Shown here piece by piece: positions 1,614-14,457 of a stretch of DNA of 64,000 nucleotides. The stretch is taken from sequence record MW879344.1; one strand, 5' to 3'. The first letter of the stretch is position 1; each line of letters starts with the position of its first letter. A program made the position numbers and the translations under genes. The notes below the pieces were generated by a model, which was not told the origin of the DNA, ran no database searches, and saw only the letters and a program-made list of their open reading frames with translations.

Positions 1614-1729
1614 GCAGTGATCGTCTAGAGGCTTAGGACACGAAAAAGCGATTCTTGGTTAAGAATCTTACGGCATCAATAAACTTTCATTTCACGAACG
1701 TAACGCAGGTTCGAATCCTGCTCACTGCA
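1614..1729 (+). tRNA. tRNA-Glu(TTC) interrupted by a 43-nt insert (1643-1685) in the anticodon stem
   Basis: Acceptor GCAGTGA/TCACTGC, T-arm GCAGG-TTCGAAT-CCTGC; removing 1643-1685 restores CG|TTC/GAACG stem around TTC (1691-1693). Confidence 0.8.
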
Positions 1730-1747
1730 CTAATATTGGAGTAATAT

Positions 1748-2050
1748 ATGAAAAGTATTCTTCTCTTTGAGTACTTCGCAACTGGCGAAGGTTGGCGTAC
1801 TGTAATCCGTTTCTATAATCAGAATCGTATTTCTGATGAGGCTGCACTGGAAACATTAAAATCAGAATTCGATCCATATTTTCATGTAGGATTTGAATTG
1901 CATGATATTAGTACTGTCAAGGATAACGCATCATTAATGCGTACTTTGAAAGAACATGTTCCAATTTTGTACAATTATGTTATGTTACCAGATGATGAAT
2001 ATCATCCAGTAATTAATGTAAAATATGAAGGTTATGTAAACTATTCATAA
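1748..2050 (+). CDS. hypothetical protein
   Basis: ORF with GGAG SD. Confidence 0.8.
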   Translation: MKSILLFEYFATGEGWRTVIRFYNQNRISDEAALETLKSEFDPYFHVGFELHDISTVKDNASLMRTLKEHVPILYNYVMLPDDEYHPVINVKYEGYVNYS

Positions 2051-2059
2051 AAGTAATTT

Positions 2060-2185
2060 GTGGGGTTAGCTCAGTCTGGTAGAGCAGCGAAAGAAAAAAC
2101 AATGGAATCTTGAAAAGGATTCTAACAGCATTATATCTTCTACTGTAAATTCGCAGGTCGGTGAGTTCGAATCCACCATCCCACA
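2060..2185 (+). tRNA. tRNA-Tyr(GTA)-like, short variable loop, interrupted by ~51-nt insert (~2092-2142)
   Basis: Acceptor GTGGGGT/ATCCCAC, D-stem GCTC/GAGC, GCGAA/TTCGC stem and CT-GTA-AA loop after removing insert. Confidence 0.75.
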
Positions 2186-2195
2186 CAAATTTGTC

Positions 2196-2224
2196 TTGAC
2201 ATGGTGTATCCTGTGTGTTATATT
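2196..2224 (+). promoter_or_regulatory. sigma70-type promoter
   Basis: TTGACA-N17-TATATT. Confidence 0.65.
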
Positions 2225-2258
2225 ACTATCATCAATTAAACGAGATAGGATTTAAATT

Positions 2259-2531
2259 ATGGACGGGATTGCAATGCGTATTCAAGTCTTACCGAATGGT
2301 TTGATTATTGGTCATGTTGTTCCAAAAGAACATCCAGCGAATCGCTGTTATAATTTGGAACCTAACCATGTATATGAACTTCAAATTGATCTTACTTATG
2401 GTAACGATAAATTGAAAAACATTGGCGAAGCTGATTTTAAAACTTCTGATGTTGATCCTCGTGGTTGTAGTATCGACCACTTGATTGCAGTAAGCAGTGG
2501 GCGTCATTTAACCGTGAATGATGGGAAATAA
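2259..2531 (+). CDS. hypothetical protein
   Basis: ORF downstream of promoter, AGGA SD. Confidence 0.75.
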   Translation: MDGIAMRIQVLPNGLIIGHVVPKEHPANRCYNLEPNHVYELQIDLTYGNDKLKNIGEADFKTSDVDPRGCSIDHLIAVSSGRHLTVNDGK

Positions 2532-2533
2532 AA

Positions 2534-2899
2534 ATGAAAGTATTCATTGATGATATTCGTGACCCAAAAAATTACTTGACACCAGAACAGGCTGATGGTA
2601 TTATTTGGATCAAAGAGTGGTGGTCAGCAAAACGCTTTTTGATTGATCATGCTGCTGAAATTGAAGTGATTCATTTTGACCATTACATGGATGAACCAAC
2701 GTTAACTGGTAAAGATTTATTCTTTATGGTTGCTGGGGATTGTATGTGGGGTGGAAAAGAAACATGGATTAAACTACAGAAAATTTATTTACATTCTTCT
2801 GATGTTGATATGGTTGAAGAACTTGTTGAAGAATATAGTACTGAATTGGCTGAAGCTGGTGTTGAGCTTATTGATAACCATCAAGAAAGGAACTACTAA
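2534..2899 (+). CDS. cyclic-phosphate processing receiver-like domain protein
   Basis: MKVFIDDIRDP...IHFDHY...GKD...IYLHSSD matches the LDDxRxP / DHD / HS pattern. Confidence 0.7.
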   Translation: MKVFIDDIRDPKNYLTPEQADGIIWIKEWWSAKRFLIDHAAEIEVIHFDHYMDEPTLTGKDLFFMVAGDCMWGGKETWIKLQKIYLHSSDVDMVEELVEEYSTELAEAGVELIDNHQERNY

Positions 2900-3256
2900 A
2901 TGAAAGTTTATGTAGATGATATTCGTAATCCACAAAACCATCTAAGTTCTGAACAGGCAGCCGATGTAGTATGGATTAAAGAATGGTGGGATGCACGTAA
3001 CTTTATCTTTTATAATAATTTAGAAATTGAAGTGATTCATTTAGATAATTATCTAGGTGACCGTACCCACACTGGGGCTGATTTACTTCAAATGATTACA
3101 TATAGGTTTCGCCGTGGGGAATTCCCTAAGTTGAAACAAATTTATCTTCACAGTTCTGATAAAGATATTGTGAATAAACTGTATGACAAACATATTGAAC
3201 GTTGTACAGAAGCTGGTGTTGAATTAATTAAAAATTCACGTCCAAACCGTAGTTAA
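2900..3256 (+). CDS. cyclic-phosphate processing receiver-like domain protein (tandem paralog)
   Basis: MKVYVDDIRNP...IHLDNYLG...GAD...IYLHSSD; clear paralog of 2534-2899. Confidence 0.7.
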   Translation: MKVYVDDIRNPQNHLSSEQAADVVWIKEWWDARNFIFYNNLEIEVIHLDNYLGDRTHTGADLLQMITYRFRRGEFPKLKQIYLHSSDKDIVNKLYDKHIERCTEAGVELIKNSRPNRS

Positions 3257-3262
3257 ACAAAT

Positions 3263-3384
3263 GGCGAGTTAGCTCAGTTGGTAGAGCAGGAAAAAAACCG
3301 ATTCTTGTATTGAATCGTACAGCAAACAATACTATTGCACTTTTAATGCCCTTGTCGGGGGTTCAATTCCCTCACTCGCCACCA
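3263..3384 (+). tRNA. tRNA-Lys(TTT) interrupted by a 46-nt insert (3291-3336) in the anticodon stem
   Basis: Acceptor GGCGAGT/ACTCGCC+ACCA; removing 3291-3336 gives GG|GCA-CT-TTT-AA-TGCCC. Confidence 0.85.
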
Positions 3385-3392
3385 AAACATCA

Positions 3393-3444
3393 AATATTCG
3401 AACCTATATGATAAATAAAAATAAATTATATAGGTTCGAATATT
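3393..3444 (+). promoter_or_regulatory. 17-bp inverted repeat over HNH ribosome-binding region, ATAAATA in the loop
   Basis: AATATTCGAACCTATAT (3393-3409) / ATATAGGTTCGAATATT (3428-3444); ATAAATA 3411-3417; ATG 3445. Confidence 0.7.
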
Positions 3445-4056
3445 ATGAATATATGTTTACAATGTAATCAAGAAATTGATGATAAGAAAAAGTTTTGTAA
3501 TAAATCTTGTGCGGCAAAGTACAATAATTCTCATAGAATATTGTCGGAAGAAACAAAATCTAAAATTTCTAAATCTTTAAAAGATCGAGAAGCTAAATTT
3601 ATTGAAACTGAAAATGTTAAGGCTGGTAGACTTCGAGCAGGTGCAAAACGTAGTGAATATGCGATTGGAAAATTATTATCTGATGATTTTGAATCATTAA
3701 GTGTTATAAGAAAGAAAAAACGTGTAAAAATGGAACAAGATAATAAATGTTTAATATGTGATTTATCTGAATGGCGTGGTTCTTTATTAACATTGGAAGT
3801 AGATCATATAGATGGAAATAACATGAATAATAGTAGAGATAATTTAAGAGCTTTATGTCCTAATTGTCATTCACAAACTGAAACGTGGCGTGGGAAAAAT
3901 AGTAAAAAAGTTATTTCAGATGAACTTTTAATTGAGATTATTTCAGTTTCTTCATCTATTGCAGAAGTTATTCGAAATACCAATATGTCTAAATCAAAAA
4001 CTTCGTATAATAAAATCCGTGCTATTATGGAAATGAATAAACTATCATTTAACTAA
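3445..4056 (+). CDS. HNH homing endonuclease with N-terminal Zn-binding motif
   Basis: LEVDHIDGNNMNN...NLRALCPNCHSQT; CxxC...FCNKSC. Confidence 0.9.
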   Translation: MNICLQCNQEIDDKKKFCNKSCAAKYNNSHRILSEETKSKISKSLKDREAKFIETENVKAGRLRAGAKRSEYAIGKLLSDDFESLSVIRKKKRVKMEQDNKCLICDLSEWRGSLLTLEVDHIDGNNMNNSRDNLRALCPNCHSQTETWRGKNSKKVISDELLIEIISVSSSIAEVIRNTNMSKSKTSYNKIRAIMEMNKLSFN

Positions 4057-4065
4057 GGTATAATT

Positions 4066-4272
4066 ATGTTCCTTGATGAAATTAAATCTGTTCCATTCCC
4101 AAGCTATAAAGCTTTGGAAAAATCACGTAACGAATCGTCTAAGTCTGTTAATCCAACAACTTATGATCGTTATGAAAAGTACCATTATCCTGCTGGTACA
4201 GAATTACGTTTAGCAAAAGCTATTGATTCTGTAATTGTAAAAATTAAAAAGGTAATTAACTATGTCGGTTAA
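4066..4272 (+). CDS. hypothetical protein
   Basis: ORF, AAGG SD. Confidence 0.7.
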   Translation: MFLDEIKSVPFPSYKALEKSRNESSKSVNPTTYDRYEKYHYPAGTELRLAKAIDSVIVKIKKVINYVG

Positions 4273-4672
4273 ATTCACACCAGTAGTAACTACATTGAAA
4301 AATACACTTGTTGTTGAATTGGAATACGAGCATGGTGATGCAGATGCAACTACCTTTGAATATGTAAATATTCCAGTACTTCCTGAACAAAAAGAAAGTA
4401 TTGGTGTGTTACTTTCAATGATTGAGCACGGTCTTGAATGTCAAAATGCTGAACGTTATGATGAAGATAGTGATCCAGTATTTGAAGATGACACTGTTTC
4501 ATTATTAGTAATGGACGGTGGCGAAATTAGCTTTACATATAATGGTATTAATGTTAACATTGGCAATGTTGGTGATTGTACCGTTGATGGTCAATTTAAT
4601 GCATCGGGCGGTATTAATGCGGTTTATTACTACGATGAAAATGCTATTAAATACAGTGTAACTGAATATTAA
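4262..4672 (+). CDS. hypothetical acidic protein
   Basis: ORF overlapping upstream stop. Confidence 0.8.
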   Translation: MSVKFTPVVTTLKNTLVVELEYEHGDADATTFEYVNIPVLPEQKESIGVLLSMIEHGLECQNAERYDEDSDPVFEDDTVSLLVMDGGEISFTYNGINVNIGNVGDCTVDGQFNASGGINAVYYYDENAIKYSVTEY

Positions 4673-4687
4673 AATTTGCGGGAACGC

Positions 4688-4717
4688 TTGACAAACTGCC
4701 AAAGACCCCGCTATAAT
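4688..4717 (+). promoter_or_regulatory. sigma70-type promoter
   Basis: TTGACA-N18-TATAAT. Confidence 0.65.
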
Positions 4718-4730
4718 AGAGGGGTTCTTT

Positions 4731-4883
4731 ATGAAGCATTATTATGATGTATTAGTGACGGTAGTTGTCTTATTCGGTCTTGCAACTTGTTTGTTTAAAA
4801 GTATAATTGTGGCATTTATTGGAATAGCAATATTCTTTTTAGGATGCCTTGTTGAATATCTTATCAATAGGAACAAAACATGA
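4731..4883 (+). CDS. small membrane protein (50 aa)
   Basis: MKHYYDVLVT... after GAGGGG SD; hydrophobic. Confidence 0.6.
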   Translation: MKHYYDVLVTVVVLFGLATCLFKSIIVAFIGIAIFFLGCLVEYLINRNKT

Positions 4884-5221
4884 AACACTTCTTGGAAGTA
4901 CTGTTCGTAGCAATTGCAATTTTGGCGGGTTTATTAGGTCACGTTGGTCTTGCGATTTGGGCAGGTATGTTTGGTGTGATTATGTGGTTTATTATCCCAA
5001 ATCCAACGTACCAACCACAAGTTCCTGTAGTACCAAAAATTAATGGTATTGAAGTGGAATTTAAATATCGTTCAGATGAAGAAGGTAAAACGTTCACCAT
5101 CGTTGTGCCAAATAATGGTGATGAAGAAATTGTTAATGTGGTTAAGTACATTAACAATTTAACAGGTACAGAAACCTCGGCTGAACGTTTAGAGATTTTA
5201 TCTACTAGGTACTTAATTTAA
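4880..5221 (+). CDS. membrane-anchored hypothetical protein
   Basis: N-terminal hydrophobic helices; ATGA overlap. Confidence 0.75.
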   Translation: MKHFLEVLFVAIAILAGLLGHVGLAIWAGMFGVIMWFIIPNPTYQPQVPVVPKINGIEVEFKYRSDEEGKTFTIVVPNNGDEEIVNVVKYINNLTGTETSAERLEILSTRYLI

Positions 5222-5265
5222 AAGTACTTTAATAGTGAAAGCCCTTATTAAAGGGCTTTTTAATT

Positions 5266-5351
5266 GGGGATATGGCGAAATTGGTAAGACGCACCACACT
5301 CAAAATGTGGCGGTTTAATCCGTGTCGGTTCGACTCCGACTATCCCCACCA
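5266..5351 (+). tRNA. tRNA-Leu(CAA)
   Basis: GGGGATA/TATCCCC, CCACA-CT-CAA-AA-TGTGG, long variable arm, ACCA. Confidence 0.95.
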
Positions 5352-5362
5352 AAAAAAAAAGA

Positions 5363-5465
5363 TTGACAGTGCTACAAATTTTAAGTAAGATAGAGTCATT
5401 GAGTTCAGCAAGTTTAAAAAATCTTTAAAAAACTGCTTGACAAGTGATTACAAATTCGATACTAT
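5363..5465 (+). promoter_or_regulatory. tandem sigma70-type promoters with A-rich UP tracts
   Basis: TTGACA-N17-TAAGAT (5363-5391) and TTGACA-N17-TACTAT (5437-5465). Confidence 0.75.
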
Positions 5466-5551
5466 GTATCACATCGACGGATGTAAAACGTATCTCTTGG
5501 TACTCAACGTTGAGTACTGTTTTAGAAAATAATATATAAGGGCTTTAAAAA

Positions 5552-5773
5552 ATGGCTAAGAACACTATTACTGATATTGGCGAAGTTGAACGTACTGTGA
5601 ACTACATCAAGTTCCAGATCTCTCAAGCTGACGAACAGCTTGCTCCATTCGCTAACAGCGATAAGCCAAAGATCTGCTATGCACATCTGTTGGATTGGAA
5701 AAAACAGTTGCAGTCTGAACTGTATGAAATCCGTCAGGCTCAGCAGAAAGCACGTCACAACACGCACAAGTAA
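5552..5773 (+). CDS. small helical protein, probably early
   Basis: First ORF after tandem promoters; host-like codon use. Confidence 0.8.
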   Translation: MAKNTITDIGEVERTVNYIKFQISQADEQLAPFANSDKPKICYAHLLDWKKQLQSELYEIRQAQQKARHNTHK

Positions 5774-5833
5774 TGAGCCATGCCGCTAACATCGTTAGCG
5801 GCGTCTTTTAAGTGATAAAAAGAGTATAAAAAT

Positions 5834-6076
5834 ATGAAAAGTGCAACTACTTTAAAGAACATGCATACTCGCATTGAGTTACTTAAATCACAACGTGATT
5901 TAGCATGGATTGAATGGCATAAGTTAAATGATTTGGAACAGCGTAACAAAGAGCAAGGTAAAGCATTGTCTCAAACTTTCGCCCTTATCACTAAACTGAC
6001 ATATGAAATTCGCGGTCTGCAAATCACCTTTGGTGAACTGAAAGAACAAGTCATCAAAGAAATCATTTTGTCTTAA
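5834..6076 (+). CDS. hypothetical coiled-coil protein
   Basis: ORF with heptad-like pattern. Confidence 0.75.
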   Translation: MKSATTLKNMHTRIELLKSQRDLAWIEWHKLNDLEQRNKEQGKALSQTFALITKLTYEIRGLQITFGELKEQVIKEIILS

Positions 6077-6092
6077 CTAAAATGGGGTTGTT

Positions 6093-6554
6093 ATGGGTGC
6101 AATTATTCTGTACAGTATTTTAGGTTTTCTCGGTGTATTCACTTTGTATATGTTCGTTGTAACATCTGCAATGGGTACTGAACGTTTAAAAACTTCACAG
6201 TACTTTATGTCTTCATTAAGTTATAGTGAAGAAGCTACAGTAAAAATCAATCTTTTGATTGATAAGTATCAAGCTGGCTTACTTAAAGCTAAGCTTAAAT
6301 CAAATGTTATAGAATTCACCGAAATGGAAGGTAATGCACTGGCTGGTGAGATTTATATTGCAAATAAGTACTTCTCGTATGGTCAGTTGTATCGTTATGG
6401 TGCAAATGGAAATACTAAGTGGCAATGCAATAAACCAGATTTAAAAACTTTCAAGCGTATTATTAAACTTGAAAAACAACTTGATATTACTGATGAAGTT
6501 CCAGTACAAAAAAGTACTAGTAAGTCATCAGAAGAACAGGTTATTCTGGACTAA
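6093..6554 (+). CDS. membrane-anchored hypothetical protein
   Basis: N-terminal TM segment. Confidence 0.8.
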   Translation: MGAIILYSILGFLGVFTLYMFVVTSAMGTERLKTSQYFMSSLSYSEEATVKINLLIDKYQAGLLKAKLKSNVIEFTEMEGNALAGEIYIANKYFSYGQLYRYGANGNTKWQCNKPDLKTFKRIIKLEKQLDITDEVPVQKSTSKSSEEQVILD

Positions 6555-6590
6555 GGGCAGTAATGCCCTATTTTAATTGAGAGATTTAAT

Positions 6591-7706: not shown

Positions 7707-7723
7707 ATAGTACATAAGGCAAC

Positions 7724-7840
7724 GGAATCTTACAGCAAAAATACTAATTTTTGATGAAAACGAAACGACGAGGTTCGAATCCTCACCCACGAATTGCCTT
7801 ATTATTAGTGGGAGCACGGTGCTGGATAAACAAAGATTCC
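7724..7840 (+). ncRNA. module-clamped, permuted tRNA-like RNA (degenerate)
   Basis: GGAATC-TTACAGCAA...GAGG-TTCGAAT-CCTC-ACCCAC...GTGGG...AAACAAA-GATTCC. Confidence 0.65.
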
Positions 7841-8010: not shown

Positions 8011-8023
8011 CAAAGCAACAAAC

Positions 8024-8141
8024 GAAATCTCACAGCAAACAAAACAATTTTTTTCCTTGCATAGAAAAACGGTGGGGTTCGATTCCCCAACATCCAAGTT
8101 GCTTTTAGGATGTGTCTGGAAGGCCGTATGACAAAGATTTC
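8024..8141 (+). ncRNA. module-clamped, permuted tRNA-like RNA (degenerate)
   Basis: GAAATCT-CACAGCAA...TGGGG-TTCGATT-CCCCA-ACATCC...GGATGT...ACAA-AGATTTC. Confidence 0.65.
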
Positions 8142-8391: not shown

Positions 8392-8396
8392 CTAAA

Positions 8397-8506
8397 GGAT
8401 TCGCACAGCAACAATAAAATCTTAAAATTCAATTGGTGAAAACAACCTTGCAGTTCGATTCTGCTTCCACAATGCGTGGATCTGGTCGATAGAAAAAACC
8501 GAATCC
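8397..8506 (+). ncRNA. module-clamped, permuted tRNA-like RNA (degenerate)
   Basis: GGATTCG-CACAGCAA...GCAG-TTCGATT-CTGC-TTCCAC...GTGGA...AAAAAAC-CGAATCC. Confidence 0.6.
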
Positions 8507-8545
8507 TGATTTTAATTAAGAAGTACTAAAGAATTTGATACACAC

Positions 8546-8698
8546 GGATTTATACAGCAAACATAATCCTAAAATAAAACATACGATAATGTTACTAACT
8601 CGGAATTCGTTCCCTTCGTTAGTACTTGGCAACTTGGGTACTTAAATAAGTTGTATCACCTCACGTGTATCGGATTAGAGGTGATTATAAATAAATCC
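8546..8698 (+). ncRNA. module-clamped multi-hairpin RNA
   Basis: GGATTTA-TACAGCAA...three hairpins...TAAATCC. Confidence 0.6.
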
Positions 8699-8827: not shown

Positions 8828-8838
8828 ATACAATAAAG

Positions 8839-9156: not shown

Positions 9157-9164
9157 AGTTCAAT

Positions 9165-9239
9165 GGGGTACGTAGCTCAGTCTGGTAGAGCAGCCATGCG
9201 AAAACGGTGTGTCGGTGGTTCGAATCCACTCGCTCCCCA
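9165..9239 (+). pseudogene. degenerate tRNA (Phe-like T-arm, anticodon unresolved)
   Basis: Intact D-arm and GGTGG-TTCGAAT-CCACT; mismatched acceptor and anticodon stems. Confidence 0.6.
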
Positions 9240-9243
9240 CTAA

Positions 9244-9300
9244 GGAATCTAGCAGCAACCATAACCCAATCAAACTTTTAATTTGACAATTATGGATTCC
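9244..9300 (+). ncRNA. module RNA carrying an isolated Lys(TTT)-type anticodon stem-loop
   Basis: GGAATC-TAGCAGCAA...TCAAA-CTTTTAA-TTTGA...GATTCC. Confidence 0.7.
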
Positions 9301-9478
9301 CGTTATTTTTAAGGATGTGATATGTCTAAAGAACAAGATGAATTTGAAAAAGAATATCTTATAAGTAAGCGTATTGATCCAAAAGCAACATTTTATATAA
9401 AATCTCGTAGAAAGAAAAATGGTTATAGAACTCGTGAATTGAATAATAAATTTCAAGAATTTCTTAAACGATTTAAAG

Positions 9479-9570
9479 GGTAAAGTGGCAGAGCGGCTGA
9501 ATGCAACCGCTTGGAAAGCGGTCAGGTTAGGTAATCCCTAGCCTCGTAGGTTCAAATCCTATCTTTACCG
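9479..9570 (+). tRNA. tRNA-Ser(GGA)
   Basis: GGTAAAG/CTTTACC, ACCGC-TT-GGA-AA-GCGGT, long variable arm, G73. Confidence 0.92.
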
Positions 9571-9622
9571 CAAAGTAATAACTCCTTATTAAAGTGAAGT
9601 ACAAAAACAATAGGAGAATATT

Positions 9623-9979
9623 ATGTACGAGAAAGATGATGGTCCATTAACTGATGAACAAATTCGTATCATCCGTGAAATGAATAGCCATCTGAATCAA
9701 ACTGATTTAGAAATTGATTTAAATTGGTTGAACAGTGATATACAAGGAAATGCAATGTATTACGACTATTATTACAAAGTTGACGGTGATCTTCGTCGTT
9801 ATACCAGTAATCAAGAGTTAACGGATGCGGAAATCAATAATATTTTTGGTGCAAGCAAACAAGTAGTAATGCTTACTCCAATTGTATTTGAACGTGACGT
9901 AACTACTGAAGACAAATCTGGTAAAAAGATTAAAAGTACTGAAAAAGTACATGTTGGCTTCTTAGGATATGTGGAATAA
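9623..9979 (+). CDS. hypothetical protein
   Basis: ORF with AGGAG SD. Confidence 0.75.
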   Translation: MYEKDDGPLTDEQIRIIREMNSHLNQTDLEIDLNWLNSDIQGNAMYYDYYYKVDGDLRRYTSNQELTDAEINNIFGASKQVVMLTPIVFERDVTTEDKSGKKIKSTEKVHVGFLGYVE

Positions 9980-9981
9980 AA

Positions 9982-10668
9982 ATGTCAAAAAAGACTGATA
10001 AAGAAGTAAAAGATACAAAAGAAAAGTACACTGTTGTTAAACACGGTTCACTAACACTAGTGAATACACCAACAGTAAAAACTTTCTATATGAATGGTTC
10101 TATTGATCATCCTACATTAACTAAGTTCCAAAAGTTCTTAGAAGATACATGTACGGAAAATAATAAAATTGATACCGAAGAAACTGAACGCAAAGAAAAG
10201 GATGAATTTAAAAAGATTCATGATCCTGAATCTAAGCCAGAGTTTGTTCCTGCTAAACGTAAAGTTGAGCGTATCAATCTGGTTATCAATAGTGGTGGTG
10301 GTTTAGTTGCAGTAATGCTAGAAGTTGTAGCACTAATGAAAACTTCACCAATTCCAATTGATACCTACTGTTTTGGTTCTGCAATGAGTGCAGCTTTCTT
10401 TATCTTCTTACATGGCAAACGCCGTTTTGTTGGTGAAGGTGCCTCATTTATGACACATAGCATTGGTGCTATGGCATGGGATAATGTACCAAACATGACA
10501 ATTCGTATGGAGTACTTGGTTAAACAAAACGAGTACGCACAACAGGAAATTGCTAAACGTACTGGAATTCCTCTTGAAAAATTAAAAGAGAAAGAACATC
10601 TCGATTGGTACTTGACTGCTGAAGAAGCGTTAGATGTTAAAATCGGTGAATATTTGATCCGAGATTAA
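9982..10668 (+). CDS. clpP: ClpP-family protease subunit
   Basis: INSGGG, GSAMSAA (catalytic Ser), FMTHS (catalytic His). Confidence 0.88.
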   Translation: MSKKTDKEVKDTKEKYTVVKHGSLTLVNTPTVKTFYMNGSIDHPTLTKFQKFLEDTCTENNKIDTEETERKEKDEFKKIHDPESKPEFVPAKRKVERINLVINSGGGLVAVMLEVVALMKTSPIPIDTYCFGSAMSAAFFIFLHGKRRFVGEGASFMTHSIGAMAWDNVPNMTIRMEYLVKQNEYAQQEIAKRTGIPLEKLKEKEHLDWYLTAEEALDVKIGEYLIRD

Positions 10669-10714
10669 ATATAAATTCTGGATTCGAAAGAATCCTTTTT
10701 TAAGTGAGATGATT

Positions 10715-10939
10715 ATGGACAATCAACACAAACATATTAAAGGGTATCGTGACCTTTCACAAAAAGAAGTGGATGCGATGAATGAGATTAAACAACTGGC
10801 TGCCATCGTTGGAGAGTTGATAGAAAAACTTGAAAGTACTGAATCAGTAGATAAACGTTGGCTTGCAATTGCAAAGACGGATTTACAAAAAGGATTCATG
10901 TCAGCAGTACGAAGTGTGGCTAAACCAGATTCCTTCTAA
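10715..10939 (+). CDS. acb2: anti-CBASS protein Acb2 (cyclic nucleotide sponge)
   Basis: MDNQHKHIKGYRDLS...RWLAIAKTDLQKGFM...PDSF closely matches the Acb2 family. Confidence 0.9.
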   Translation: MDNQHKHIKGYRDLSQKEVDAMNEIKQLAAIVGELIEKLESTESVDKRWLAIAKTDLQKGFMSAVRSVAKPDSF

Positions 10940-10948
10940 GGAACAAAG

Positions 10949-11329
10949 ATGTATACAACGGTTAATCATGCTGATATAATTGATGATATTATAACTGAAA
11001 TACTTGAAATTTATACATGTCGAGTTGAAATTTATAAAGATGGTCATTTATTCACTCAGTACGGGTATAATACTAAACATAATGTGAATTATCATATAAA
11101 TGTAAAGTACTATAATGATAATCCAAGTAATGGTGATAAAGCGAATAGCTTAATGGTAGAATTTAAATTTACCAATAGAGTTCCGAAGGGACTGAAAAAT
11201 CATTACAAGTTATCTATACCTGAAATAACAAGTCTTACAGAAGAACGGCATTTTCAATTAATGTTTGTCACTGATGATATGTATTTGGATTATGAAGTTA
11301 TAAATAAATTACGTACACATATTGTGTAA
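10949..11329 (+). CDS. hypothetical protein, EExxFQ paralog family
   Basis: C-terminal TEERHFQL motif. Confidence 0.75.
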   Translation: MYTTVNHADIIDDIITEILEIYTCRVEIYKDGHLFTQYGYNTKHNVNYHINVKYYNDNPSNGDKANSLMVEFKFTNRVPKGLKNHYKLSIPEITSLTEERHFQLMFVTDDMYLDYEVINKLRTHIV

Positions 11330-11341
11330 AAAAAAAGTTTT

Positions 11342-11393
11342 AGAATCTAACAGCAATCAAAACTCATTGGATATATGAAAAAAGATAGATTCT
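11342..11393 (+). ncRNA. minimal module RNA
   Basis: AGAATCT-AACAGCAA...TCAT-loop-ATGA-AAAAAGAT-AGATTCT. Confidence 0.65.
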
Positions 11394-11400
11394 AGTATTT

Positions 11401-11473
11401 GGGAATATAATTCAGTTGGTAGAATGCTCGACCGATAATCGAGTCGCCGCTGGTTCGAGTCCAGCTATTCCCA
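11401..11473 (+). tRNA. tRNA-Ile(GAT)
   Basis: GGGAATA/TATTCCC, CTCGA-CC-GAT-AA-TCGAG (C33). Confidence 0.9.
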
Positions 11474-11573
11474 CGAAGTAGTTCAGTACTGAAAAATGTA
11501 CAGTGAAATTATTCAACACTATAGGTAGCACTTTGAATGAATCAGTAAGCCTATAAGTAACTACAATAAATTT

Positions 11574-11700
11574 GGAATTCAACAGCAATTCACTTACTAA
11601 AAACAGCTACCTCACGGTTTGTAGGTTCAAGTCCTACCTTGTACTTTCGAGTACATGTGGTGAAAATGGTAAACACGGCTGTCCAAAAGAAATGAATTCC
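11574..11700 (+). tRNA. circularly permuted tRNA gene, Leu(TAA)-like
   Basis: 3' half 11596-11644, T-TTCG-A linker, 5' half 11651-11682; GCTGT/ACAGC anticodon stem; flanked by GGAATTC/GAATTCC. Confidence 0.75.
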
Positions 11701-11753
11701 AGTATTAATTAAGACATAAATATTCTTATACACTTTTTTGTAAGGATATAATT

Positions 11754-12353
11754 ATGGAAATGAAAAAGTTGATGGAAGATATTTCTGCCATCATGGAAGG
11801 ACAATTACCTGGTTATTATTATCATGGAAGTTCTGCCCCAATATCAAATTTTAGTGATGAGTTTGTTGGTAGAGGAAATGATGAATACGGTCCGGGAATA
11901 TATTTTAGTTCAGTTCCAAATACTTCTATAGGTTATGCAAAAGATGGCGGTTCTAATGGAATGGTATATCAGTGCGAAATCAATTTAAGAAAAGAACTAT
12001 CTAAAAAAACTAGAGTTAATAAAGCAGTACTATTAAAATTAATGCAAAATACACCTGATGAAGATGCATATACTAACTGGAATGAAAATAAAAATGTTGC
12101 TTATAGAACAGCATTACAGGGTTATGTAGATGAAGGTAATATGTATGATGCGTTAATGGGTGTTTGGTACGATTGGTATAGAGAATATCCTGTTCAATTC
12201 GTGCGTTCACTAGTACAGTTAGGATATGATGGATACATATATACTTTTGCAAGCGGTGAACGTTTTATTATAGTATATAATCCAGCAAGTATAAAAGTTG
12301 TAAACACATTCAATCCAGAAGAAGCTATGCAGAAACTGATTGGAAGTGAATAA
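11754..12353 (+). CDS. ADP-ribosyltransferase-fold protein (ART-PolyVal-like), possibly virion-packaged
   Basis: YYHGS, GPGIYFS, YA, late E motifs; ATAAATA at 11716-11722. Confidence 0.6.
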   Translation: MEMKKLMEDISAIMEGQLPGYYYHGSSAPISNFSDEFVGRGNDEYGPGIYFSSVPNTSIGYAKDGGSNGMVYQCEINLRKELSKKTRVNKAVLLKLMQNTPDEDAYTNWNENKNVAYRTALQGYVDEGNMYDALMGVWYDWYREYPVQFVRSLVQLGYDGYIYTFASGERFIIVYNPASIKVVNTFNPEEAMQKLIGSE

Positions 12354-12361
12354 TAAGATTT

Positions 12362-12479
12362 GGAATTCAACAGCAAATCATTCTAAACCCGTAGCATGTC
12401 GTAGGTTCAAGTCCTACCAGTACTTTCGAGTACTGTAGCTCAGTTGGTAGAGCAGCCACCTTAAAAAGAAATGAATTCC
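12362..12479 (+). tRNA. circularly permuted tRNA-like gene, anticodon unresolved
   Basis: T-arm and CAGTACT, TTCG, AGTACTG and D-arm GCTC/GAGC; flanked by GGAATTC/GAATTCC. Confidence 0.7.
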
Positions 12480-12511
12480 AGTATTAATTAAAACAACATG
12501 AGTATAAATCA

Positions 12512-12961
12512 ATGTCTGATAAGCATCAATTTAAAGTAAACATCGGTGATTGGTCACAAGATGGTCATAATCAATATGATGTTTTAGTTCTTAACAGTAC
12601 TAAACCAGTAGATGAAGTACAAAAAGCATTTAAAAAAGCTGCAACTGATTTACATTTACTAGTAAATGGTCGTTTTCTAATTGCAGATGAATTTGAAGAT
12701 TGTAGTCTATCTGAAGACCATGCAGAAGTTCTTAAAAATGCAGGTGTAAAATTTGATGATTTAGTGTATAATGATGGCGATGATGAAGAACCAAATTATA
12801 TTATTGAAGGTTCAAGTGATATGACTATCCTTGTGATGCGGATCGCCCAACTTGAATTGGACTTTGAATTTGAAATTACGAATGATGCAATTCCGAACTT
12901 TAACGGGTTCTGGACAGAAGAACAAATGCCATCAATCGGATATGGTTTGTATAACATATAA
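12512..12961 (+). CDS. hypothetical acidic protein
   Basis: ORF. Confidence 0.8.
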   Translation: MSDKHQFKVNIGDWSQDGHNQYDVLVLNSTKPVDEVQKAFKKAATDLHLLVNGRFLIADEFEDCSLSEDHAEVLKNAGVKFDDLVYNDGDDEEPNYIIEGSSDMTILVMRIAQLELDFEFEITNDAIPNFNGFWTEEQMPSIGYGLYNI

Positions 12962-12971
12962 AACAAGTTTT

Positions 12972-13034
12972 GGAATCTAGCAGCACCCATAAAATGAAAT
13001 CAACTGTTAATTGAAAAATTCAAAAATGGATTCC
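12972..13034 (+). ncRNA. module RNA carrying an isolated Asn(GTT)-type anticodon stem-loop
   Basis: GGAATC-TAGCAGCA...TCAA-CTGTTAA-TTGA...GATTCC. Confidence 0.7.
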
Positions 13035-13054
13035 AGCCTATTTCGGAGTAAAAA

Positions 13055-13324
13055 ATGTATTATGCTCGATTAGAATATCCAAACAATGGATATGAGATTG
13101 AAAGAATACGTCTTAAAGCCTTAGATCGCAAAAAGTACTACCCAGTAGTTTCGATTGATATTGGTAGTTCAAGTACTCGCATATATCTTGAAGGTGATAA
13201 GAATGCATATAATAGTGTGAACTTTGAATTCTATACCAAACATGGTGATGAATATATTCTTGAAGATATTTTCGAAGACCCTGATTTAAATCCGTACTTG
13301 GATGATGATGATGAAGAATATTAA
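13055..13324 (+). CDS. hypothetical protein
   Basis: ORF with GGAG SD. Confidence 0.8.
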   Translation: MYYARLEYPNNGYEIERIRLKALDRKKYYPVVSIDIGSSSTRIYLEGDKNAYNSVNFEFYTKHGDEYILEDIFEDPDLNPYLDDDDEEY

Positions 13325-13392
13325 ATAAAAATACCACAAATAAATGAAACGCTTCAAAAAATTGTGGTATAATATAAGTAAGTTAAACAAGA

Positions 13393-13464
13393 GGTTATGT
13401 CGTATAAAGGTTATTACGGAGAGCTGTTAACTCTTTTATCTTGGTTCGATTCCAAGCATGACCG
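13393..13464 (+). tRNA. tRNA-Asn(GTT)
   Basis: GGTTATG/CATGACC, GAGAG-CT-GTT-AA-CTCTT. Confidence 0.9.
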
Positions 13465-13581
13465 CAAAAAGTTAAATTCACCAGGCGTACTATGGTGGGA
13501 AAGGTATCATGATACCAATTCGAATAGAATACGTATTAAACCCTTGAACGGTTTTCTGTAAACTCAATTTAACAAATAATT

Positions 13582-13636
13582 AAGAATCTAACAGCAATCA
13601 AAACTCATTCGATTATATGAAAAAAGATAGATTCTT
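13582..13636 (+). ncRNA. minimal module RNA
   Basis: Near-copy of 11342-11393. Confidence 0.65.
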
Positions 13637-13641
13637 GTTTT

Positions 13642-13714
13642 AGGAGTATGGTGTAATTGGTTAGCACACGTGACTTTGACTCACGTAGTTGAGGTTCGAG
13701 TCCTTATATTCCTG
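13642..13714 (+). tRNA. tRNA-Gln(TTG)
   Basis: AGGAGTA/TATTCCT, CGTGA-CT-TTG-AC-TCACG. Confidence 0.9.
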
Positions 13715-13865
13715 CAAATTAAAATTTCATTCATTTCCTTGTGTGAAACAAGCTGGTATGATTCCCCTTGCTTGTAAAATTATCGAACGGGAACCGCGTT
13801 GCACCTGTACAGGTCAGATTGTAAAGATCGAGTATGTACAGTACTGAGAGCGGCAGTACAATAAA

Positions 13866-13947
13866 GCGGGATTAGCTCAGTGGTAGAGCACTTGCCTTCC
13901 AAGCAAGAGGCGAATAGGTTCCATCGGTTCGAATCCGATATTCCGCT
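13866..13947 (+). tRNA. tRNA-Gly(TCC) with enlarged variable region
   Basis: GCGGGAT/ATTCCGC, U73, CTTGC-CT-TCC-AA-GCAAG, ~15-nt variable region. Confidence 0.85.
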
Positions 13948-14065
13948 CAAACTAAACAAACAATAAGGTGATTTTTATGCTATAGAATCCTAGTACTGGT
14001 CCTCCTAAAGAATTTAATTCTGATATAAACAACTCAAAATTAAACTACTATAGGAAGAACATACC

Positions 14066-14392
14066 ATGTTAAACAAAGAACAATATATTACTGTAAAAAA
14101 TACTTGGAAAGCTGTAAAAGAACATAACATTTTTGATCATGTGATCTATAATGTACTTCGTGGAGTCCCATCTGATACTGGTTTCGCACCAATTACAGAC
14201 AGGGGTCGTTTACACGCTAACAACAATGACCCGTTCAATATGTACAATTACGCAGTTCGTGAAATTCATTATGAATTAAACGAAAAACGGTACAATTACG
14301 AAAAGACAGTAAAGCATTATTCTGAACTATTCGGCATTGAATTTACAAAAGAACTCATCGAAGAAATTGTTTCTTTGATTAAAGTTAAATAA
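14066..14392 (+). CDS. hypothetical protein
   Basis: ORF with AGGA SD. Confidence 0.8.
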   Translation: MLNKEQYITVKNTWKAVKEHNIFDHVIYNVLRGVPSDTGFAPITDRGRLHANNNDPFNMYNYAVREIHYELNEKRYNYEKTVKHYSELFGIEFTKELIEEIVSLIKVK

Positions 14393-14400
14393 CAGAATTA

Positions 14401-14457
14401 AAGAATCCAGCAGCAACTAAAACTCATTCGCTTAATATGAAAAAGAAACGGATTCTT
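14401..14457 (+). ncRNA. minimal module RNA
   Basis: AAGAATCC-AGCAGCAA...TCAT-loop-ATGA...GGATTCTT. Confidence 0.65.

What the first reader, a model, noticed from the sequence alone, without database searches (positions are those of the whole stretch)
1614..14457. 14-copy RNA module that interrupts, permutes or mimics tRNAs
Seen: one architecture recurs at 1643, 2092, 3291, 7724, 8024, 8397, 8546, 9244, 11342, 11574, 12362, 12972, 13582 and 14401. It consists of an A-rich strand, a 6-8 bp helix, and a conserved RCAGCA (one RCGGCA) directly 3' of one helix strand. The helix shows compensatory swaps: GAATC/GATTC, GATTC/GAATC, GAAATCT/AGATTTC, GGATTTA/TAAATCC, GGAATTC/GAATTCC. It occurs in two topologies that are circular permutations of each other. 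Type I (3 copies) is an insert in a tRNA anticodon stem: exon - A-rich - helix - RCAGCA - exon. Type II (11 copies) is an outer clamp around a permuted tRNA, a tRNA fragment, an anticodon stem-loop or hairpins. Established: bacterial tRNA introns are group I/II ribozymes of hundreds of nt; short enzyme-spliced introns and permuted tRNA genes are known from archaea and algae. Inference: this is an unrecognised phage tRNA splicing/circularisation signal, small ribozyme, or protein-bound scaffold. It may make latent tRNAs or decoys against anticodon nucleases. I do not recognise it as a named family.
Basis: partly seen in the sequence, partly recalled or inferred. Interest (0 to 1): 0.96.

Follow-up and report, generated by a model that had tools for sequence, protein, structure and literature searches.

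The report
Phage tRNA-mimic RNAs sharing one handle
A group of giant bacteriophages carries about fifteen small structured RNAs per genome, all unannotated; each joins the same short conserved "handle" to a whole tRNA, a rearranged tRNA or a bare anticodon hairpin, which most resembles bacterial Y RNAs and points to an unexplored phage use of tRNA look-alikes.

Summary
All 14 copies exist at the stated places, all on the + strand, between 1.6 and 14.5 kb. A 15th lies upstream of the window.

The shared module is a closing helix of up to 10 bp (UURGAAUCYA/URGAUUCYAG). It is followed by an invariant RCAGCA(A) and a G-free linker, and it is entered from an A-rich strand. The module is conserved at syntenic sites in Eneladusvirus, Mimasvirus and related jumbo phages. 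The helix flanks covary. It is absent from the sampled bacterial genomes and matches no Rfam family.

The window is Erwinia phage pEa_SNUABM_49.

- Three copies sit inside otherwise perfect tRNA genes (Glu, GUA, Lys). They split the anticodon arm, and the split stem covaries across phages.
- Two copies are circularly permuted tRNAs with a closed acceptor stem, which is the YrlA/Y-RNA architecture.
- Other copies carry tRNA-like bodies, exact Lys or Asn anticodon stem-loops, or a small hairpin.

Best reading (about 0.45): these are stable, unspliced tRNA-mimic RNAs. The handle would be a protein-docking site analogous to the Ro site of Y RNAs. No Ro gene and no Ro motif were found. The cargo would lure or tether tRNA-directed enzymes.

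Splicing, a ribozyme and a purely cis-acting role are not excluded. I class it as a new variant of a known kind.

The parts
1614..1730 (+). Type I copy 1. tRNA-Glu(UUC)-like gene split by a 43-nt module at 1643-1685. Layout: A-rich AAAAAGC, hairpin 1650-1656/1661-1667, UU, ACGGCA 1670-1675, 10-nt linker. Anticodon stem CG|UUC..GAACG is split at 28/29.
   Evidence: Sequence. Coordinates. Joined flanks give ARAGORN tRNA-Glu(ttc), 74 nt.
2060..2186 (+). Type I copy 2. tRNA with anticodon GUA and a short variable loop, split by a 51-nt module at 2092-2142. Hairpin 2103-2111/2116-2124 has a GAAA loop; ACAGCA is at 2125-2130. The insert lies between stem strand GCGAA and loop CUGUAAA (31/32).
   Evidence: The insert is shared with Yersinia phage fHe-Yen9-04 and absent from the syntenic tRNA of Kaldavass and XbC2.
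3263..3384 (+). Type I copy 3. tRNA-Lys(UUU) with encoded CCA, split by a 46-nt module at 3291-3336. Hairpin 3299-3304/3312-3317; ACAGCA 3319-3324. Stem GG|GCA..UGCCC is split at 28/29.
   Evidence: Rfam tRNA 46.5 bits with a large insertion. Joined flanks give tRNA-Lys(ttt), 76 nt. The split stem covaries in 6 phages while the anticodon changes between UUU, GAU and UUC.
7713..7840 (+). Type II. RNA with its own promoter (7677-7706, TG-extended -10). Leader AUAAGGCAA; helix 7724-7730/7834-7840; ACAGCA 7732-7737. Cargo is a T arm (GAGGUUCGAAUCCUC), a CCCAC/GUGGG hairpin whose loop UUGCCUUAU pairs with the leader, and a D-like hairpin.
   Evidence: Promoter, leader and leader-loop pairing are conserved in 6 phages, with the compensatory change GGCAA/UUGCC to GGCAG/CUGCC.
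8012..8141 (+). Type II. Helix 8024-8030/8135-8141 (GAAAUCU/AGAUUUC); ACAGCA 8032-8037. Cargo is a T arm and a hairpin whose loop GUUGCUUU pairs with the upstream AAAGCAAC, plus a D-like hairpin.
   Evidence: Own promoter in Mimasvirus, Kaldavass and XbC2. Compensatory change UAGCAAC/GUUGCUA to AAGCAAC/GUUGCUU.
8396..8507 (+). Type II. It starts 4 nt after tRNA-Glu (8318-8392). Helix AGGAUUCG/CGAAUCCU; ACAGCA 8405-8410. Cargo is a T arm (GCAGUUCGAUUCUGC) plus two hairpins.
   Evidence: Orthologues in fHe-Yen9-04, CBB and GAP32.
8546..8698 (+). Type II. Helix GGAUUUAU/AUAAAUCC; ACAGCA 8554-8559. The 131-nt cargo holds three hairpins.
   Evidence: Orthologues in fHe-Yen9-04, GAP32 and XbC2.
9244..9300 (+). 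Type II. It starts 4 nt after the pseudo-tRNA at 9166-9238. GCAGCA is at 9252-9257. Cargo is the anticodon stem-loop mimic UCAAA-CUUUUAA-UUUGA (Lys loop).
   Evidence: Covariance model R1 scores 61 bits. Orthologous locus compared.
11340..11395 (+). Type II, short. It ends 5 nt before tRNA-Ile (11401). ACAGCA is at 11350-11355. Cargo is the hairpin UCAU-loop-AUGA.
   Evidence: R1 scores 71.3 bits. The hairpin covaries with UUCU..AGAA in GAP32.
11572..11702 (+). Type II. Circularly permuted class-II-like tRNA: anticodon-like stem ACAGC/GCUGU, variable arm, T arm, acceptor closed by UUCG, D arm. ACAGCA is at 11582-11587. It lies upstream of the ADP-ribosyltransferase ORF.
   Evidence: R1 scores 33.2 bits. 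The stem and variable arm covary in 6 phages.
12360..12481 (+). Type II. Circularly permuted tRNA: 5-bp anticodon-like stem with a central A.C, AUGUC, T arm, 7-bp acceptor closed by UUCG, UA, D arm. ACAGCA is at 12370-12375.
   Evidence: Rfam YrlA 40.5 bits, E 3.6e-6, model positions 24-84. The hand-drawn cloverleaf is 95% paired with 4 compensatory pairs.
12970..13036 (+). Type II, short. GCAGCA is at 12980-12985. Cargo is the anticodon stem-loop mimic UCAA-CUGUUAA-UUGA (Asn loop).
   Evidence: R1 scores 71.4 bits. It is 87-95% identical across 5 further phage species and annotated in none.
13581..13637 (+). Type II, short. It ends 4 nt before tRNA-Gln (13642). ACAGCA is at 13591-13596. Cargo is the hairpin UCAU-loop-AUGA.
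   Evidence: R1 scores 71.5 bits..
14401..14457 (+). Type II, short. It directly follows an ORF stop codon. GCAGCA is at 14410-14415. Cargo is the hairpin UCAU-loop-AUGA.
   Evidence: R1 scores 58.6 bits..
11754..12353 (+). ORF between the two permuted-tRNA copies, with an ART-PolyVal ADP-ribosyltransferase domain. It is a neighbour, not a proven part of the module.
   Evidence: Pfam PF18760, E 1.8e-11. The RNA-ORF-RNA order is kept in CBB and GAP32. The ORF is degraded in fHe-Yen9-04 and absent in Kaldavass and XbC2, where the RNAs persist.

Best explanation
The 14 copies (15 in the genome) are genes or gene segments for stable, unspliced, tRNA-mimicking small RNAs that share one 'handle'.

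The handle is a closing helix with an invariant GAAUC/GAUUC core. RCAGCA(A) and a G-free strand leave the helix on one side, and an A-rich strand enters it on the other.

Shown:
- The handle is an RNA-level structure conserved across several jumbo-phage genera.
- Its distal end may be open (type II) or closed by any loop (type I), so the junction side is what matters.
- It always joins a 4-5 bp stem that carries either an exact anticodon loop, a complete tRNA body or a permuted tRNA body.
- The RNAs are either transcribed from their own promoters or lie within 0-6 nt of tRNA ends. In the second case ordinary tRNA processing (RNase P, 3' trimming) would release them.

Inferred:
- The handle is the docking site of an unidentified protein. 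It occupies exactly the place that the Ro60/Rsr-binding motif holds in YrlA-type Y RNAs.
- The variable cargo presents a tRNA elbow or an anticodon stem-loop of Lys, Glu, Asn or Tyr type to tRNA-directed enzymes.
- The most likely role is as a decoy or tether for host tRNA-targeting nucleases or repair factors during infection.
- The type I RNAs are then tRNAs with a side arm that keeps them off the ribosome. They are not precursors.
For: Real and selected:
- Motif enrichment.
- Syntenic conservation in Eneladusvirus, Mimasvirus, Kaldavass, XbC2, Salmonella phage Munch and a dozen uncultured contigs, mostly over 100 kb.
- Modules are 87-95% identical where flanking DNA is about 76-85%.
- All copies are on the transcribed strand.
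- U.G pairs and compensatory changes occur in the helix.

Handle as a junction-side recognition element:
- The core pairs, RCAGCA and the A-rich strand are invariant, while loops and open ends vary freely.

Y-RNA analogy:
- 12360-12481 and 11572-11702 are permuted tRNAs with a closed acceptor stem. This is the published definition of YrlA architecture.
- A genuine Ro-linked YrlA (phage Bxz1) has a 10-bp closing stem followed at once by its protein-binding motif, the same layout as the helix followed by ACAGCAA.

Cargo is a mimic rather than a precursor:
- The ASL-only copies keep canonical 7-nt loops identical to those of the phage's own tRNA-Asn and tRNA-Lys. The Asn copy is conserved in all six phages, yet it can never become a tRNA.
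- Each interrupted tRNA duplicates an uninterrupted isoacceptor in the same genome.
- Orthologous type I genes keep the body and the split stem but switch anticodon.

Expression:
- Extended -10 promoters are conserved 7-9 nt upstream of two of the RNAs.
- Other copies abut tRNA ends.
Against: - No partner protein is identified.
- No Ro/TROVE gene is detectable in these phages by tblastn. The bacterial Rsr motif GNCGAAN0-1G is absent from the handle.
- No expression data exist for any copy.
- The decoy role rests on which anticodon loops are mimicked. Their link to known anticodon-nuclease targets comes from my general knowledge and was not tested here.
- The exons of the three type I genes form flawless tRNAs when joined, one with an encoded CCA. 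That is also what a spliced precursor would look like.
- Three short copies carry only a small hairpin with no obvious tRNA likeness.
- Folding z-scores of individual copies are modest.
Confidence: 0.45

Rival explanations
1. Protein-catalysed splicing or maturation signal. The handle marks a segment that an endonuclease cuts out of pre-tRNAs. Phage RNA ligases then rejoin the exons, giving latent tRNA-Glu, tRNA-GUA and tRNA-Lys. In type II copies the same cuts and ligation would circularise or re-permute the RNA.
For: - Joined flanks give canonical tRNAs, one with CCA.
- The split anticodon stem covaries in 6 phages.
- The syntenic tRNA in Kaldavass and XbC2 lacks the insert, which is intron-like presence/absence.
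- Relatives are reported to encode two RNA ligases, a CCA-adding enzyme and a Thg1-like enzyme.
Against: - The insertion point differs between copies (28/29, 29/30, 31/32).
- Junction nucleotides are not conserved, and no bulge-helix-bulge can be drawn consistently.
- No splicing endonuclease or RtcB is among the window's ORFs of at least 150 aa.
- At least eight copies have no tRNA exons to join.
- Every interrupted tRNA is redundant with an intact isoacceptor.
- At one locus, loss of the module took the anticodon arm with it and the pseudo-tRNA was kept.
Confidence: 0.15
2. Cis-acting transcript element with no trans function. It would be a repeated processing, stability or insulator structure of the tRNA-operon transcripts. 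Or it would be a DNA-level repeat that promotes shuffling of the plastic tRNA region, as promoter/stem-loop cassettes are reported to do in T4-type phages (from my own knowledge).
For: - Copies sit at gene boundaries, directly after stop codons or abutting tRNAs.
- A near-identical 16-17-nt core is repeated on one strand in a hyperplastic region with homing endonuclease genes.
- Modules are gained and lost between relatives.
Against: - It does not explain why the module sits inside anticodon stems of otherwise intact tRNAs.
- It does not explain exact anticodon loops or full tRNA-like folds with covariation in the cargo.
- It does not explain dedicated promoters for two copies.
- U.G pairs and asymmetric flanks argue against terminal inverted repeats of a mobile DNA element.
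Confidence: 0.2
3. True Y RNAs. The handle binds a Ro60/Rsr protein supplied by the host or by an undetected phage homologue, and the RNAs act like YrlA as tethers to exoribonucleases or RNA-repair enzymes.
For: - YrlA-type architecture, and an Rfam YrlA hit stronger than that of a genuine phage YrlA.
- Some jumbo phages are reported to carry TROVE proteins with a tRNA-like partner.
Against: - The Rsr motif GNCGAAN0-1G is absent.
- tblastn with a phage Ro protein finds 356 phage records, including proteobacterial phages, but none of this clade.
- Published YrlA genes lie within 4 kb of the Ro gene.
Confidence: 0.08
4. Small self-cleaving or self-ligating ribozyme formed by the helix, RCAGCA and the A-rich strand.
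For: - Nucleotides at a helix junction are strictly conserved.
- The element tolerates circular permutation, as several small ribozymes do.
Against: - No match to any ribozyme family at E<=5.
- Only one conserved helix and two single strands that cannot pair with each other.
- No second conserved helix or pseudoknot was found.
Confidence: 0.04
5. Sponge for a host single-strand RNA-binding chaperone such as Hfq. AAC-AGC-AAN and the A-rich strand are runs of A-R-N triplets, the motif said to bind the Hfq distal face (from my own knowledge).
For: A-R-N periodicity of A|ACAGCA|A and of GAAAAAAGA, AAAAAGAAA and similar strands. There are many copies per genome.
Against: The two C residues and the helix core are invariant, which is more than an A-R-N motif needs. 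It does not explain the tRNA-like cargo. It was not tested.
Confidence: 0.08

Closest known systems
YrlA-type bacterial and phage Y RNAs (Rfam RF02553; Chen et al. 2014, PMC4201824; Wang et al. 2018, doi 10.1101/312249)
   Same: A closing stem made by the 5' and 3' ends. A conserved short motif lies directly 3' of the 5' strand. The domain is a circularly permuted tRNA (V, T arm, closed acceptor-like stem, D arm, anticodon-like stem). Several paralogues occur per genome, including shorter forms (YrlB-like) without the tRNA-like domain.
   Different: The motif is RCAGCA(A) after a GAAUC-core helix, not GNCGAAN0-1G. There is no Ro/TROVE gene nearby or detectable in the phage. The same handle is also inserted inside genuine tRNA genes and clamps bare anticodon stem-loops, which is not described for Y RNAs. 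The RNAs are embedded in a tRNA cluster.
Enzyme-spliced tRNA introns and circularly permuted or split tRNA genes of archaea and red algae (PMC3978253, PMC4090602)
   Same: Short inserts at non-canonical positions of the anticodon arm. The 3' half precedes the 5' half in permuted genes. The exons form perfect tRNAs.
   Different: No bulge-helix-bulge motif. No splicing endonuclease was found. The acceptor stem of the permuted copies is closed by a tetraloop with no discriminator or CCA. Many copies have no exons at all.
Stable RNAs co-transcribed with tRNAs: phage T4 species 1 and 2 RNAs, and the E. coli 3'ETS-leuZ spacer RNA (from my own knowledge, not checked here)
   Same: Small RNAs of unknown or sponge function lie inside tRNA transcription units and are released by tRNA-processing enzymes.
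   Different: No shared sequence or handle is known. Those RNAs are single genes, not a family of about 15 members with modular cargo.
tRNA-like decoys and mimics in general (tmRNA, viral tRNA-like structures, the thrS operator anticodon-arm mimic; partly)
   Same: They use a tRNA elbow or anticodon-arm shape to engage tRNA-binding proteins.
   Different: Those have a free CCA end or act in cis on one mRNA. Here a common handle is combined with interchangeable cargo.

Membership tests
YrlA / Y RNA-like (RF02553) | tRNA-like domain in permuted order (T arm, closed acceptor-like stem, D arm) closed by an anticodon-like stem | tested here: met
   Met for 12360-12481 and 11572-11702. Rfam YrlA scores 40.5 bits on model positions 24-84, and the fold covaries. 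Met only in part for 7724, 8024 and 8397. Not met for the short copies or the type I copies.
YrlA / Y RNA-like (RF02553) | Score at or above the Rfam gathering threshold (69 bits) | tested here: not met
   40.5 bits. However, a genuine Ro-linked YrlA of phage Bxz1 scores only 32.5 bits, so this threshold is a weak criterion for phage members.
YrlA / Y RNA-like (RF02553) | Ro60/Rsr-binding motif GNCGAAN0-1G near the 5' end of the closing stem | tested here: not met
   The motif is defined. The handle reads UURGAAUCYA-RCAGCAA in all copies. Bxz1 YrlA has GCCGAGAG at that place.
YrlA / Y RNA-like (RF02553) | Encoded within about 4 kb of a Ro60/TROVE gene on the same strand and bound by that protein | tested here: not met
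   No TROVE domain among the window's ORFs of at least 150 aa. tblastn with Bxz1 Ro finds no record of this phage clade. Binding itself cannot be tested with these tools, and a host Rsr was not examined.
Archaeal/eukaryal enzyme-spliced tRNA intron | Bulge-helix-bulge (or relaxed helix-bulge-helix) at the exon-intron junctions | tested here: not met
   Junctions of nine type I genes were compared by eye. No conserved pairing joins the two junctions, and the positions vary.
Archaeal/eukaryal enzyme-spliced tRNA intron | A splicing endonuclease (EndA/Sen) and a ligase are present | tested here: inconclusive
   No such domain in 40 ORFs of the window. RNA ligases are reported for relatives. The other 294 kb of the genome was not scanned.
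Archaeal/eukaryal enzyme-spliced tRNA intron | Removal of the insert restores a canonical tRNA | tested here: met
   ARAGORN calls tRNA-Glu, tRNA-(GUA) and tRNA-Lys on the joined flanks.
Known small self-cleaving ribozymes (hammerhead, twister, twister-sister, pistol, hatchet, hairpin, HDV-like) | Match to the family covariance model | tested here: not met
   No ribozyme family among the matches up to E=5 in 1500-14600.
Group I / group II tRNA introns of bacteria and phages | Ribozyme core of hundreds of nucleotides | tested here: not met
   The inserts are 43-51 nt. There are no Rfam intron hits.
Mobile DNA with terminal inverted repeats (MITE-like) | Perfect terminal inverted repeats, target-site duplication and a shared internal sequence | tested here: not met
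   The arms include conserved U.G positions (T opposite G in DNA). The flanks are asymmetric (RCAGCA on one side only), the interiors are unrelated, and no duplication is seen.

The most novel reading that the evidence does not exclude
A bacteriophage runs a protein-catalysed, non-ribozyme system for cutting and rejoining tRNAs. The handle would mark short inserts in anticodon stems (and the ends of permuted tRNAs) for excision and ligation by phage RNA-repair enzymes. Spare tRNA-Glu, tRNA-Lys and tRNA-GUA would then be kept latent, or invisible to host anticodon nucleases, and switched on during infection.
Probability: 0.12. Interest if true: 0.95.

Novelty: new variant of a known kind. Interest (0 to 1): 0.8.

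Why it matters
- **Y-RNA architecture without Ro.** If the handle is a protein-docking site, these phages carry a modular RNA toolkit: one handle combined with interchangeable tRNA bodies or anticodon hairpins. That would extend the Y-RNA idea (a scaffold plus a tRNA mimic) to a system with no Ro protein and to cargo types not described before.
- **A possible counter-defence.** It would give a concrete, testable candidate for how jumbo phages meet host defences that cut tRNA anticodon loops. The only known answers so far are tRNA repair and nuclease-resistant phage tRNAs.
- **A possible new splicing route.** If the inserts are instead spliced, this would be the first enzyme-spliced short tRNA intron, and the first permuted tRNA, outside archaea and eukaryotes.
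- **Annotation.** About 15 conserved RNA genes per genome are currently unannotated, or labelled 'tRNA-OTHER/pseudo', in every deposited genome of this clade.

Tried and rejected
- **Rfam.** At gathering thresholds only tRNAs match. At E<=5 the one relevant extra hit is YrlA on the tRNA-like part of one copy, and nothing matches the handle.
- **Ro/TROVE partner.** tblastn with mycobacteriophage Bxz1 gp220 gives 356 phage records, none from this clade.
- **Pfam on 40 window ORFs of at least 150 aa.** No reverse transcriptase, splicing endonuclease, RtcB or TROVE. A retron-like reading (closing inverted repeat plus a conserved AGC) was therefore dropped.
- **The ADP-ribosyltransferase ORF between the two permuted tRNAs.** No solved homologue and no defence-system match. 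It is lost in relatives that keep the RNAs, so it is not an obligate partner.
- **K-turn, pseudoknot or pairing between the two single strands.** The GA dinucleotides needed are not conserved, and both strands are purine/C-rich.
- **Bulge-helix-bulge at type I junctions.** No consistent pairing.
- **RNAalifold on mixed paralogues.** It recovered only the handle and the T arm, so hand-drawn structures were needed.
- **Generic descriptor without the A-rich requirement.** It was not specific: 62 hits against about 38 in shuffles.
- **Exact-word scans.** The 15-mer and 16-mer scans of viral and bacterial collections return mostly chance hits. The covariance model confirmed only large phage contigs and no bacterial locus.
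- **Literature searches.** Nothing was found on this element. Supplementary YrlA alignments were not available.

Full report
**Source.** The window is identical to Erwinia phage pEa_SNUABM_49 (MW879344.1, 358 kb, genus Eneladusvirus, a Rak2-like jumbo phage). Window position 1 is record position 294050. The finding lies in the first half of a tRNA cluster that holds 21 ARAGORN tRNAs up to 26.7 kb. It is interleaved with small ORFs and homing endonuclease genes.

**Observation.**
- AWTCNNRCRGCA occurs 12 times against 0.65 expected. Eleven are on the + strand at 1664-14415. The - strand hit at 56444 lies inside an ORF and has no other feature of the module.
- Three copies carry core variants (GAAUUC, GAUUUA).
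- Adding the helix and an A-rich strand to the descriptor gives 17 hits against 3.3 in shuffles.
- A covariance model (R1) built from 24 short copies of six phages finds seven copies in the window and nothing else in 64 kb on either strand.
- A 15th copy (type I) lies 17 kb upstream of the window.

**Anatomy of the module.**
- A helix of up to 10 bp, consensus 5'-UURGAAUCYA paired with URGAUUCYAG-3'. The GAAUC-type core is always 2 nt from RCAGCA.
- RCAGCA, with C, G, C and A invariant and A at 96% at the third position. It is usually followed by A and then a G-free C/A-rich linker of 10-18 nt (J1).
- On the other side, an A-rich strand of 8-12 nt (J2) enters the helix.
- J1 and J2 cannot pair with each other. 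Together they form a large internal loop or junction between the helix and a 4-5 bp 'cargo' stem.
- The far end of the helix is either open (type II) or closed by an arbitrary loop such as GAAA, GGUU or UUGUAUU (type I). Only the junction side is therefore constrained.
- In 24 short copies the helix is 95% paired. Three flanking pairs covary (UA/AU, AU/GC, UA/CG/UG) and the five core pairs never vary.
- Over 41 distinct helices from seven genomes, 282 of 287 cells in the first seven pairs are paired.
- The conserved terminal U.G, the other U.G pairs and the single orientation argue for RNA rather than duplex DNA.

**Type I copies.**
- Joining the flanks of the three inserts (1643-1685, 2092-2142, 3291-3336; 43, 51 and 46 nt) gives canonical cloverleaves: tRNA-Glu(UUC), a tRNA with anticodon GUA and a short variable loop, and tRNA-Lys(UUU) with encoded CCA.
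- The insert splits the 5' strand of the anticodon stem at 28/29 (copies 1 and 3), or separates stem from loop at 31/32 (copy 2).
- In the orthologues of copy 3 the two stem halves covary: GG|GCA..UGCCC, CG|ACU..AGUCG, CG|AGC..GCUCG and GCG|GC..GCCG. The anticodon loop changes between CUUUUAA, AUGAUAA and CUUUCAC. A second locus shows the same in Mimasvirus (GG|CCA..UGGCC).
- Modules come and go. The tRNA syntenic to copy 2 has no insert in Kaldavass and XbC2. At the locus of 9166-9238 the Eneladusvirus gene has no module, only a degenerate anticodon arm.
- Every interrupted tRNA has an uninterrupted isoacceptor in the same genome.

**Type II copies.**
- 12360-12481 and 11572-11702 are complete circularly permuted tRNAs. 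The order is: anticodon-like 5-bp stem, variable region, T arm, 7-bp acceptor closed by UUCG, U-A, D arm with GG, then the second stem strand. The module replaces the anticodon loop.
- The hand-drawn fold is 95% paired in six sequences with four compensatory pairs. The second subfamily shows covariation in the anticodon-like stem and in a class-II-type variable arm.
- 7724 and 8024 have a T arm, a D-like hairpin with GG, and a 5' leader that pairs with the loop after the T arm. Compensatory changes support that pairing. Both have conserved TG-extended -10 promoters 7-9 nt upstream of the leader.
- 8397 and 8546 carry a T-like arm and further hairpins.
- 9244 and 12970 carry 4-5 bp stems with loops CUUUUAA and CUGUUAA. 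These are identical to the loops of the phage's own tRNA-Lys and tRNA-Asn. The Asn form is kept in all six phages.
- 11340, 13581 and 14401 carry a small hairpin (UCAU..AUGA) that covaries with UUCU..AGAA in GAP32.
- Several copies start 0-4 nt after a tRNA or end 4-6 nt before one, so RNase P and 3' processing would release them.

**How the two topologies relate.** Type II-long is exactly what is obtained by reading a tandem pair of type I genes from the second helix arm of one to the first helix arm of the next, with the intergenic spacer reduced to a tetraloop. An ordinary DNA duplication therefore explains the permutation, and no RNA circle is required (inference).

**Distribution.**
- R1 finds modules in Serratia BF, Yersinia fHe-Yen9-04, Pectobacterium CBB, Cronobacter GAP32, Erwinia Kaldavass, Xanthomonas XbC2 and Salmonella phage Munch (next to tRNA-Ser, tRNA-Pro and tRNA-Leu).
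- It also finds them in uncultured contigs, mostly of 100-371 kb.
- Eighty bacterial loci seeded by the 16-mer contain none.
- No deposited genome annotates them, apart from 'tRNA-OTHER/pseudo' for type I genes.

**Comparison with the known.**
- YrlA RNAs, the bacterial Y RNAs bound by Ro60/Rsr, are described as circularly permuted tRNAs with a closed acceptor stem. A long stem made by the RNA ends carries the Ro site, a conserved motif on the 5' strand (GNCGAAN0-1G).
- Rfam YrlA hits 12394-12456 at 40.5 bits over the tRNA-like part only.
- As a yardstick, the genuine YrlA 190 nt upstream of the Ro gene of mycobacteriophage Bxz1 scores 32.5 bits over the same part. That RNA has a 10-bp closing stem followed directly by GCCGAGAG, which is the position ACAGCAA holds here.
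- The architecture is therefore shared, but three defining features fail: the motif, the linked Ro gene and the Rfam threshold.
- The handle inside real tRNAs and around bare anticodon hairpins has no counterpart in the Y-RNA literature I could search.

**Mechanism.**
- I commit to the reading that these are unspliced tRNA-mimic RNAs and that the handle docks a protein (confidence 0.45).
- The strongest argument is parsimony across cargo types. ASL-only copies keep perfect anticodon loops under strong conservation although they can never be tRNAs. So the anticodon loop is functional while attached to the handle, and the same can hold for type I RNAs.
- The mimicked loops (Lys UUU, Glu UUC, Asn GUU, Tyr GUA) belong to the tRNAs with hypermodified wobble bases. 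To my knowledge these are the classic targets of anticodon nucleases (PrrC, colicin E5-type enzymes). That link is general knowledge and was not tested.
- A decoy or tether for tRNA-directed host enzymes is therefore the most likely job. An adaptor role in phage RNA repair is an alternative within the same model.

**Rival readings.**
- Splicing (0.15) is kept alive by the flawless exons. It lacks conserved junctions, a fixed position, an endonuclease and any relevance to most copies.
- A purely cis-acting or DNA-level repeat (0.2) fits the positions at gene boundaries and the turnover. It does not fit the cargo structures or the dedicated promoters.
- True Ro-binding Y RNA: 0.08.
- Hfq-type sponge: 0.08.
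- Ribozyme: 0.04.

**Limits.**
- There are no expression data.
- Only 96 of 358 kb of this genome was examined for RNAs, and only the window's ORFs of at least 150 aa for proteins.
- Host genomes were not examined for Rsr.
- Covariation counts come from related sequences and few independent events.
- Rak2, 121Q and PBECO4 were not tested.

Noticed in passing
window 11754-12353 (+): ORF with an ART-PolyVal ADP-ribosyltransferase domain (Pfam E 1.8e-11), flanked on both sides by the two permuted-tRNA RNAs. The order RNA-ORF-RNA is kept in CBB and GAP32. The ORF is degraded in fHe-Yen9-04 and missing in Kaldavass and XbC2. Homologues in Salmonella phage Munch and relatives sit next to tRNA-Gly. 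Its target is unknown.
   Followed up: partly
window 9166-9238 (+): tRNA-like gene (Rfam tRNA 36.4 bits, not called by ARAGORN) with normal acceptor, D and T arms but a degenerate anticodon arm (3-bp stem, about 10-nt loop). Its orthologue in Mimasvirus, Kaldavass and XbC2 is a type I tRNA-Lys with the module.
   Followed up: partly
window 7898-8011 (+): A further structured RNA behind its own TG-extended -10 promoter (7861-7890). It has a T arm (GAGGGUUCGAUCCCCUG) and an AGCGA/UCGCU stem but no D arm and no module. It runs directly into the 8024 copy. It is absent at this place in Mimasvirus, where the promoter abuts the 8024-type RNA.
   Followed up: no
window 20428-20514 (+): tRNA-Lys(UUU) of 87 nt with an unusually long variable arm (GCGGGUAUAUCCCAUC) for a Lys tRNA. 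tRNA-Gly at 13866-13948 is also over-long (83 nt).
   Followed up: no
MW879344.1 277331-277449 (L116 15332-15450), upstream of the window: 15th copy of the module, type I, in a gene annotated tRNA-Leu(taa) of 119 nt. Hairpin AAUUC/GAAUU, ACAGCA, split stem ACG|GC..GCCGU, loop AUAGGGA.
   Followed up: partly
window 3445-4056 (+): HNH/NUMOD3 homing endonuclease gene immediately downstream of type I copy 3. It is present at the same place in fHe-Yen9-04. It appears to be absent from Serratia BF, where the annotation shows no gene of that size at the spot and the alignment to the window has a gap, and it is absent from CBB and GAP32. Two more HNH ORFs lie at 46247-46789 and 48312-49274.
   Followed up: no
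L116 28411-28486; L002 718-790; L003 918-990: A tRNA with anticodon CUA (amber suppressor, annotated Pyl/Sup) is conserved upstream of the window in this phage and its relatives.
   Followed up: no
window 54265-63682 (-): A run of paralogous ORFs with RCC1-like beta-propeller repeats, alternating with glycine-rich-domain and lectin-like ORFs. These may be virion fibre or whisker genes.
   Followed up: no
window 9982-10668 (+) and 38128-39120 (+): A ClpP-family protease (annotated head maturation protease in Serratia BF) sits inside the tRNA/RNA cluster. A sigma-70 region 2/3 protein lies further downstream.
   Followed up: no
L115 10861-10988 (Salmonella phage Munch): Two modules in direct tandem immediately upstream of tRNA-Pro. 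This is the only tandem pair seen.
   Followed up: no
all copies: The helix arm next to RCAGCA (UU[A/G]GAAUC[U/C]) resembles the T-loop/T-stem sequence UUCGAAUCC of many tRNAs in the cluster. RCAGCA resembles the end of the D arm (AGAGCA). This may hint that the handle itself derives from tRNA pieces.
   Followed up: no
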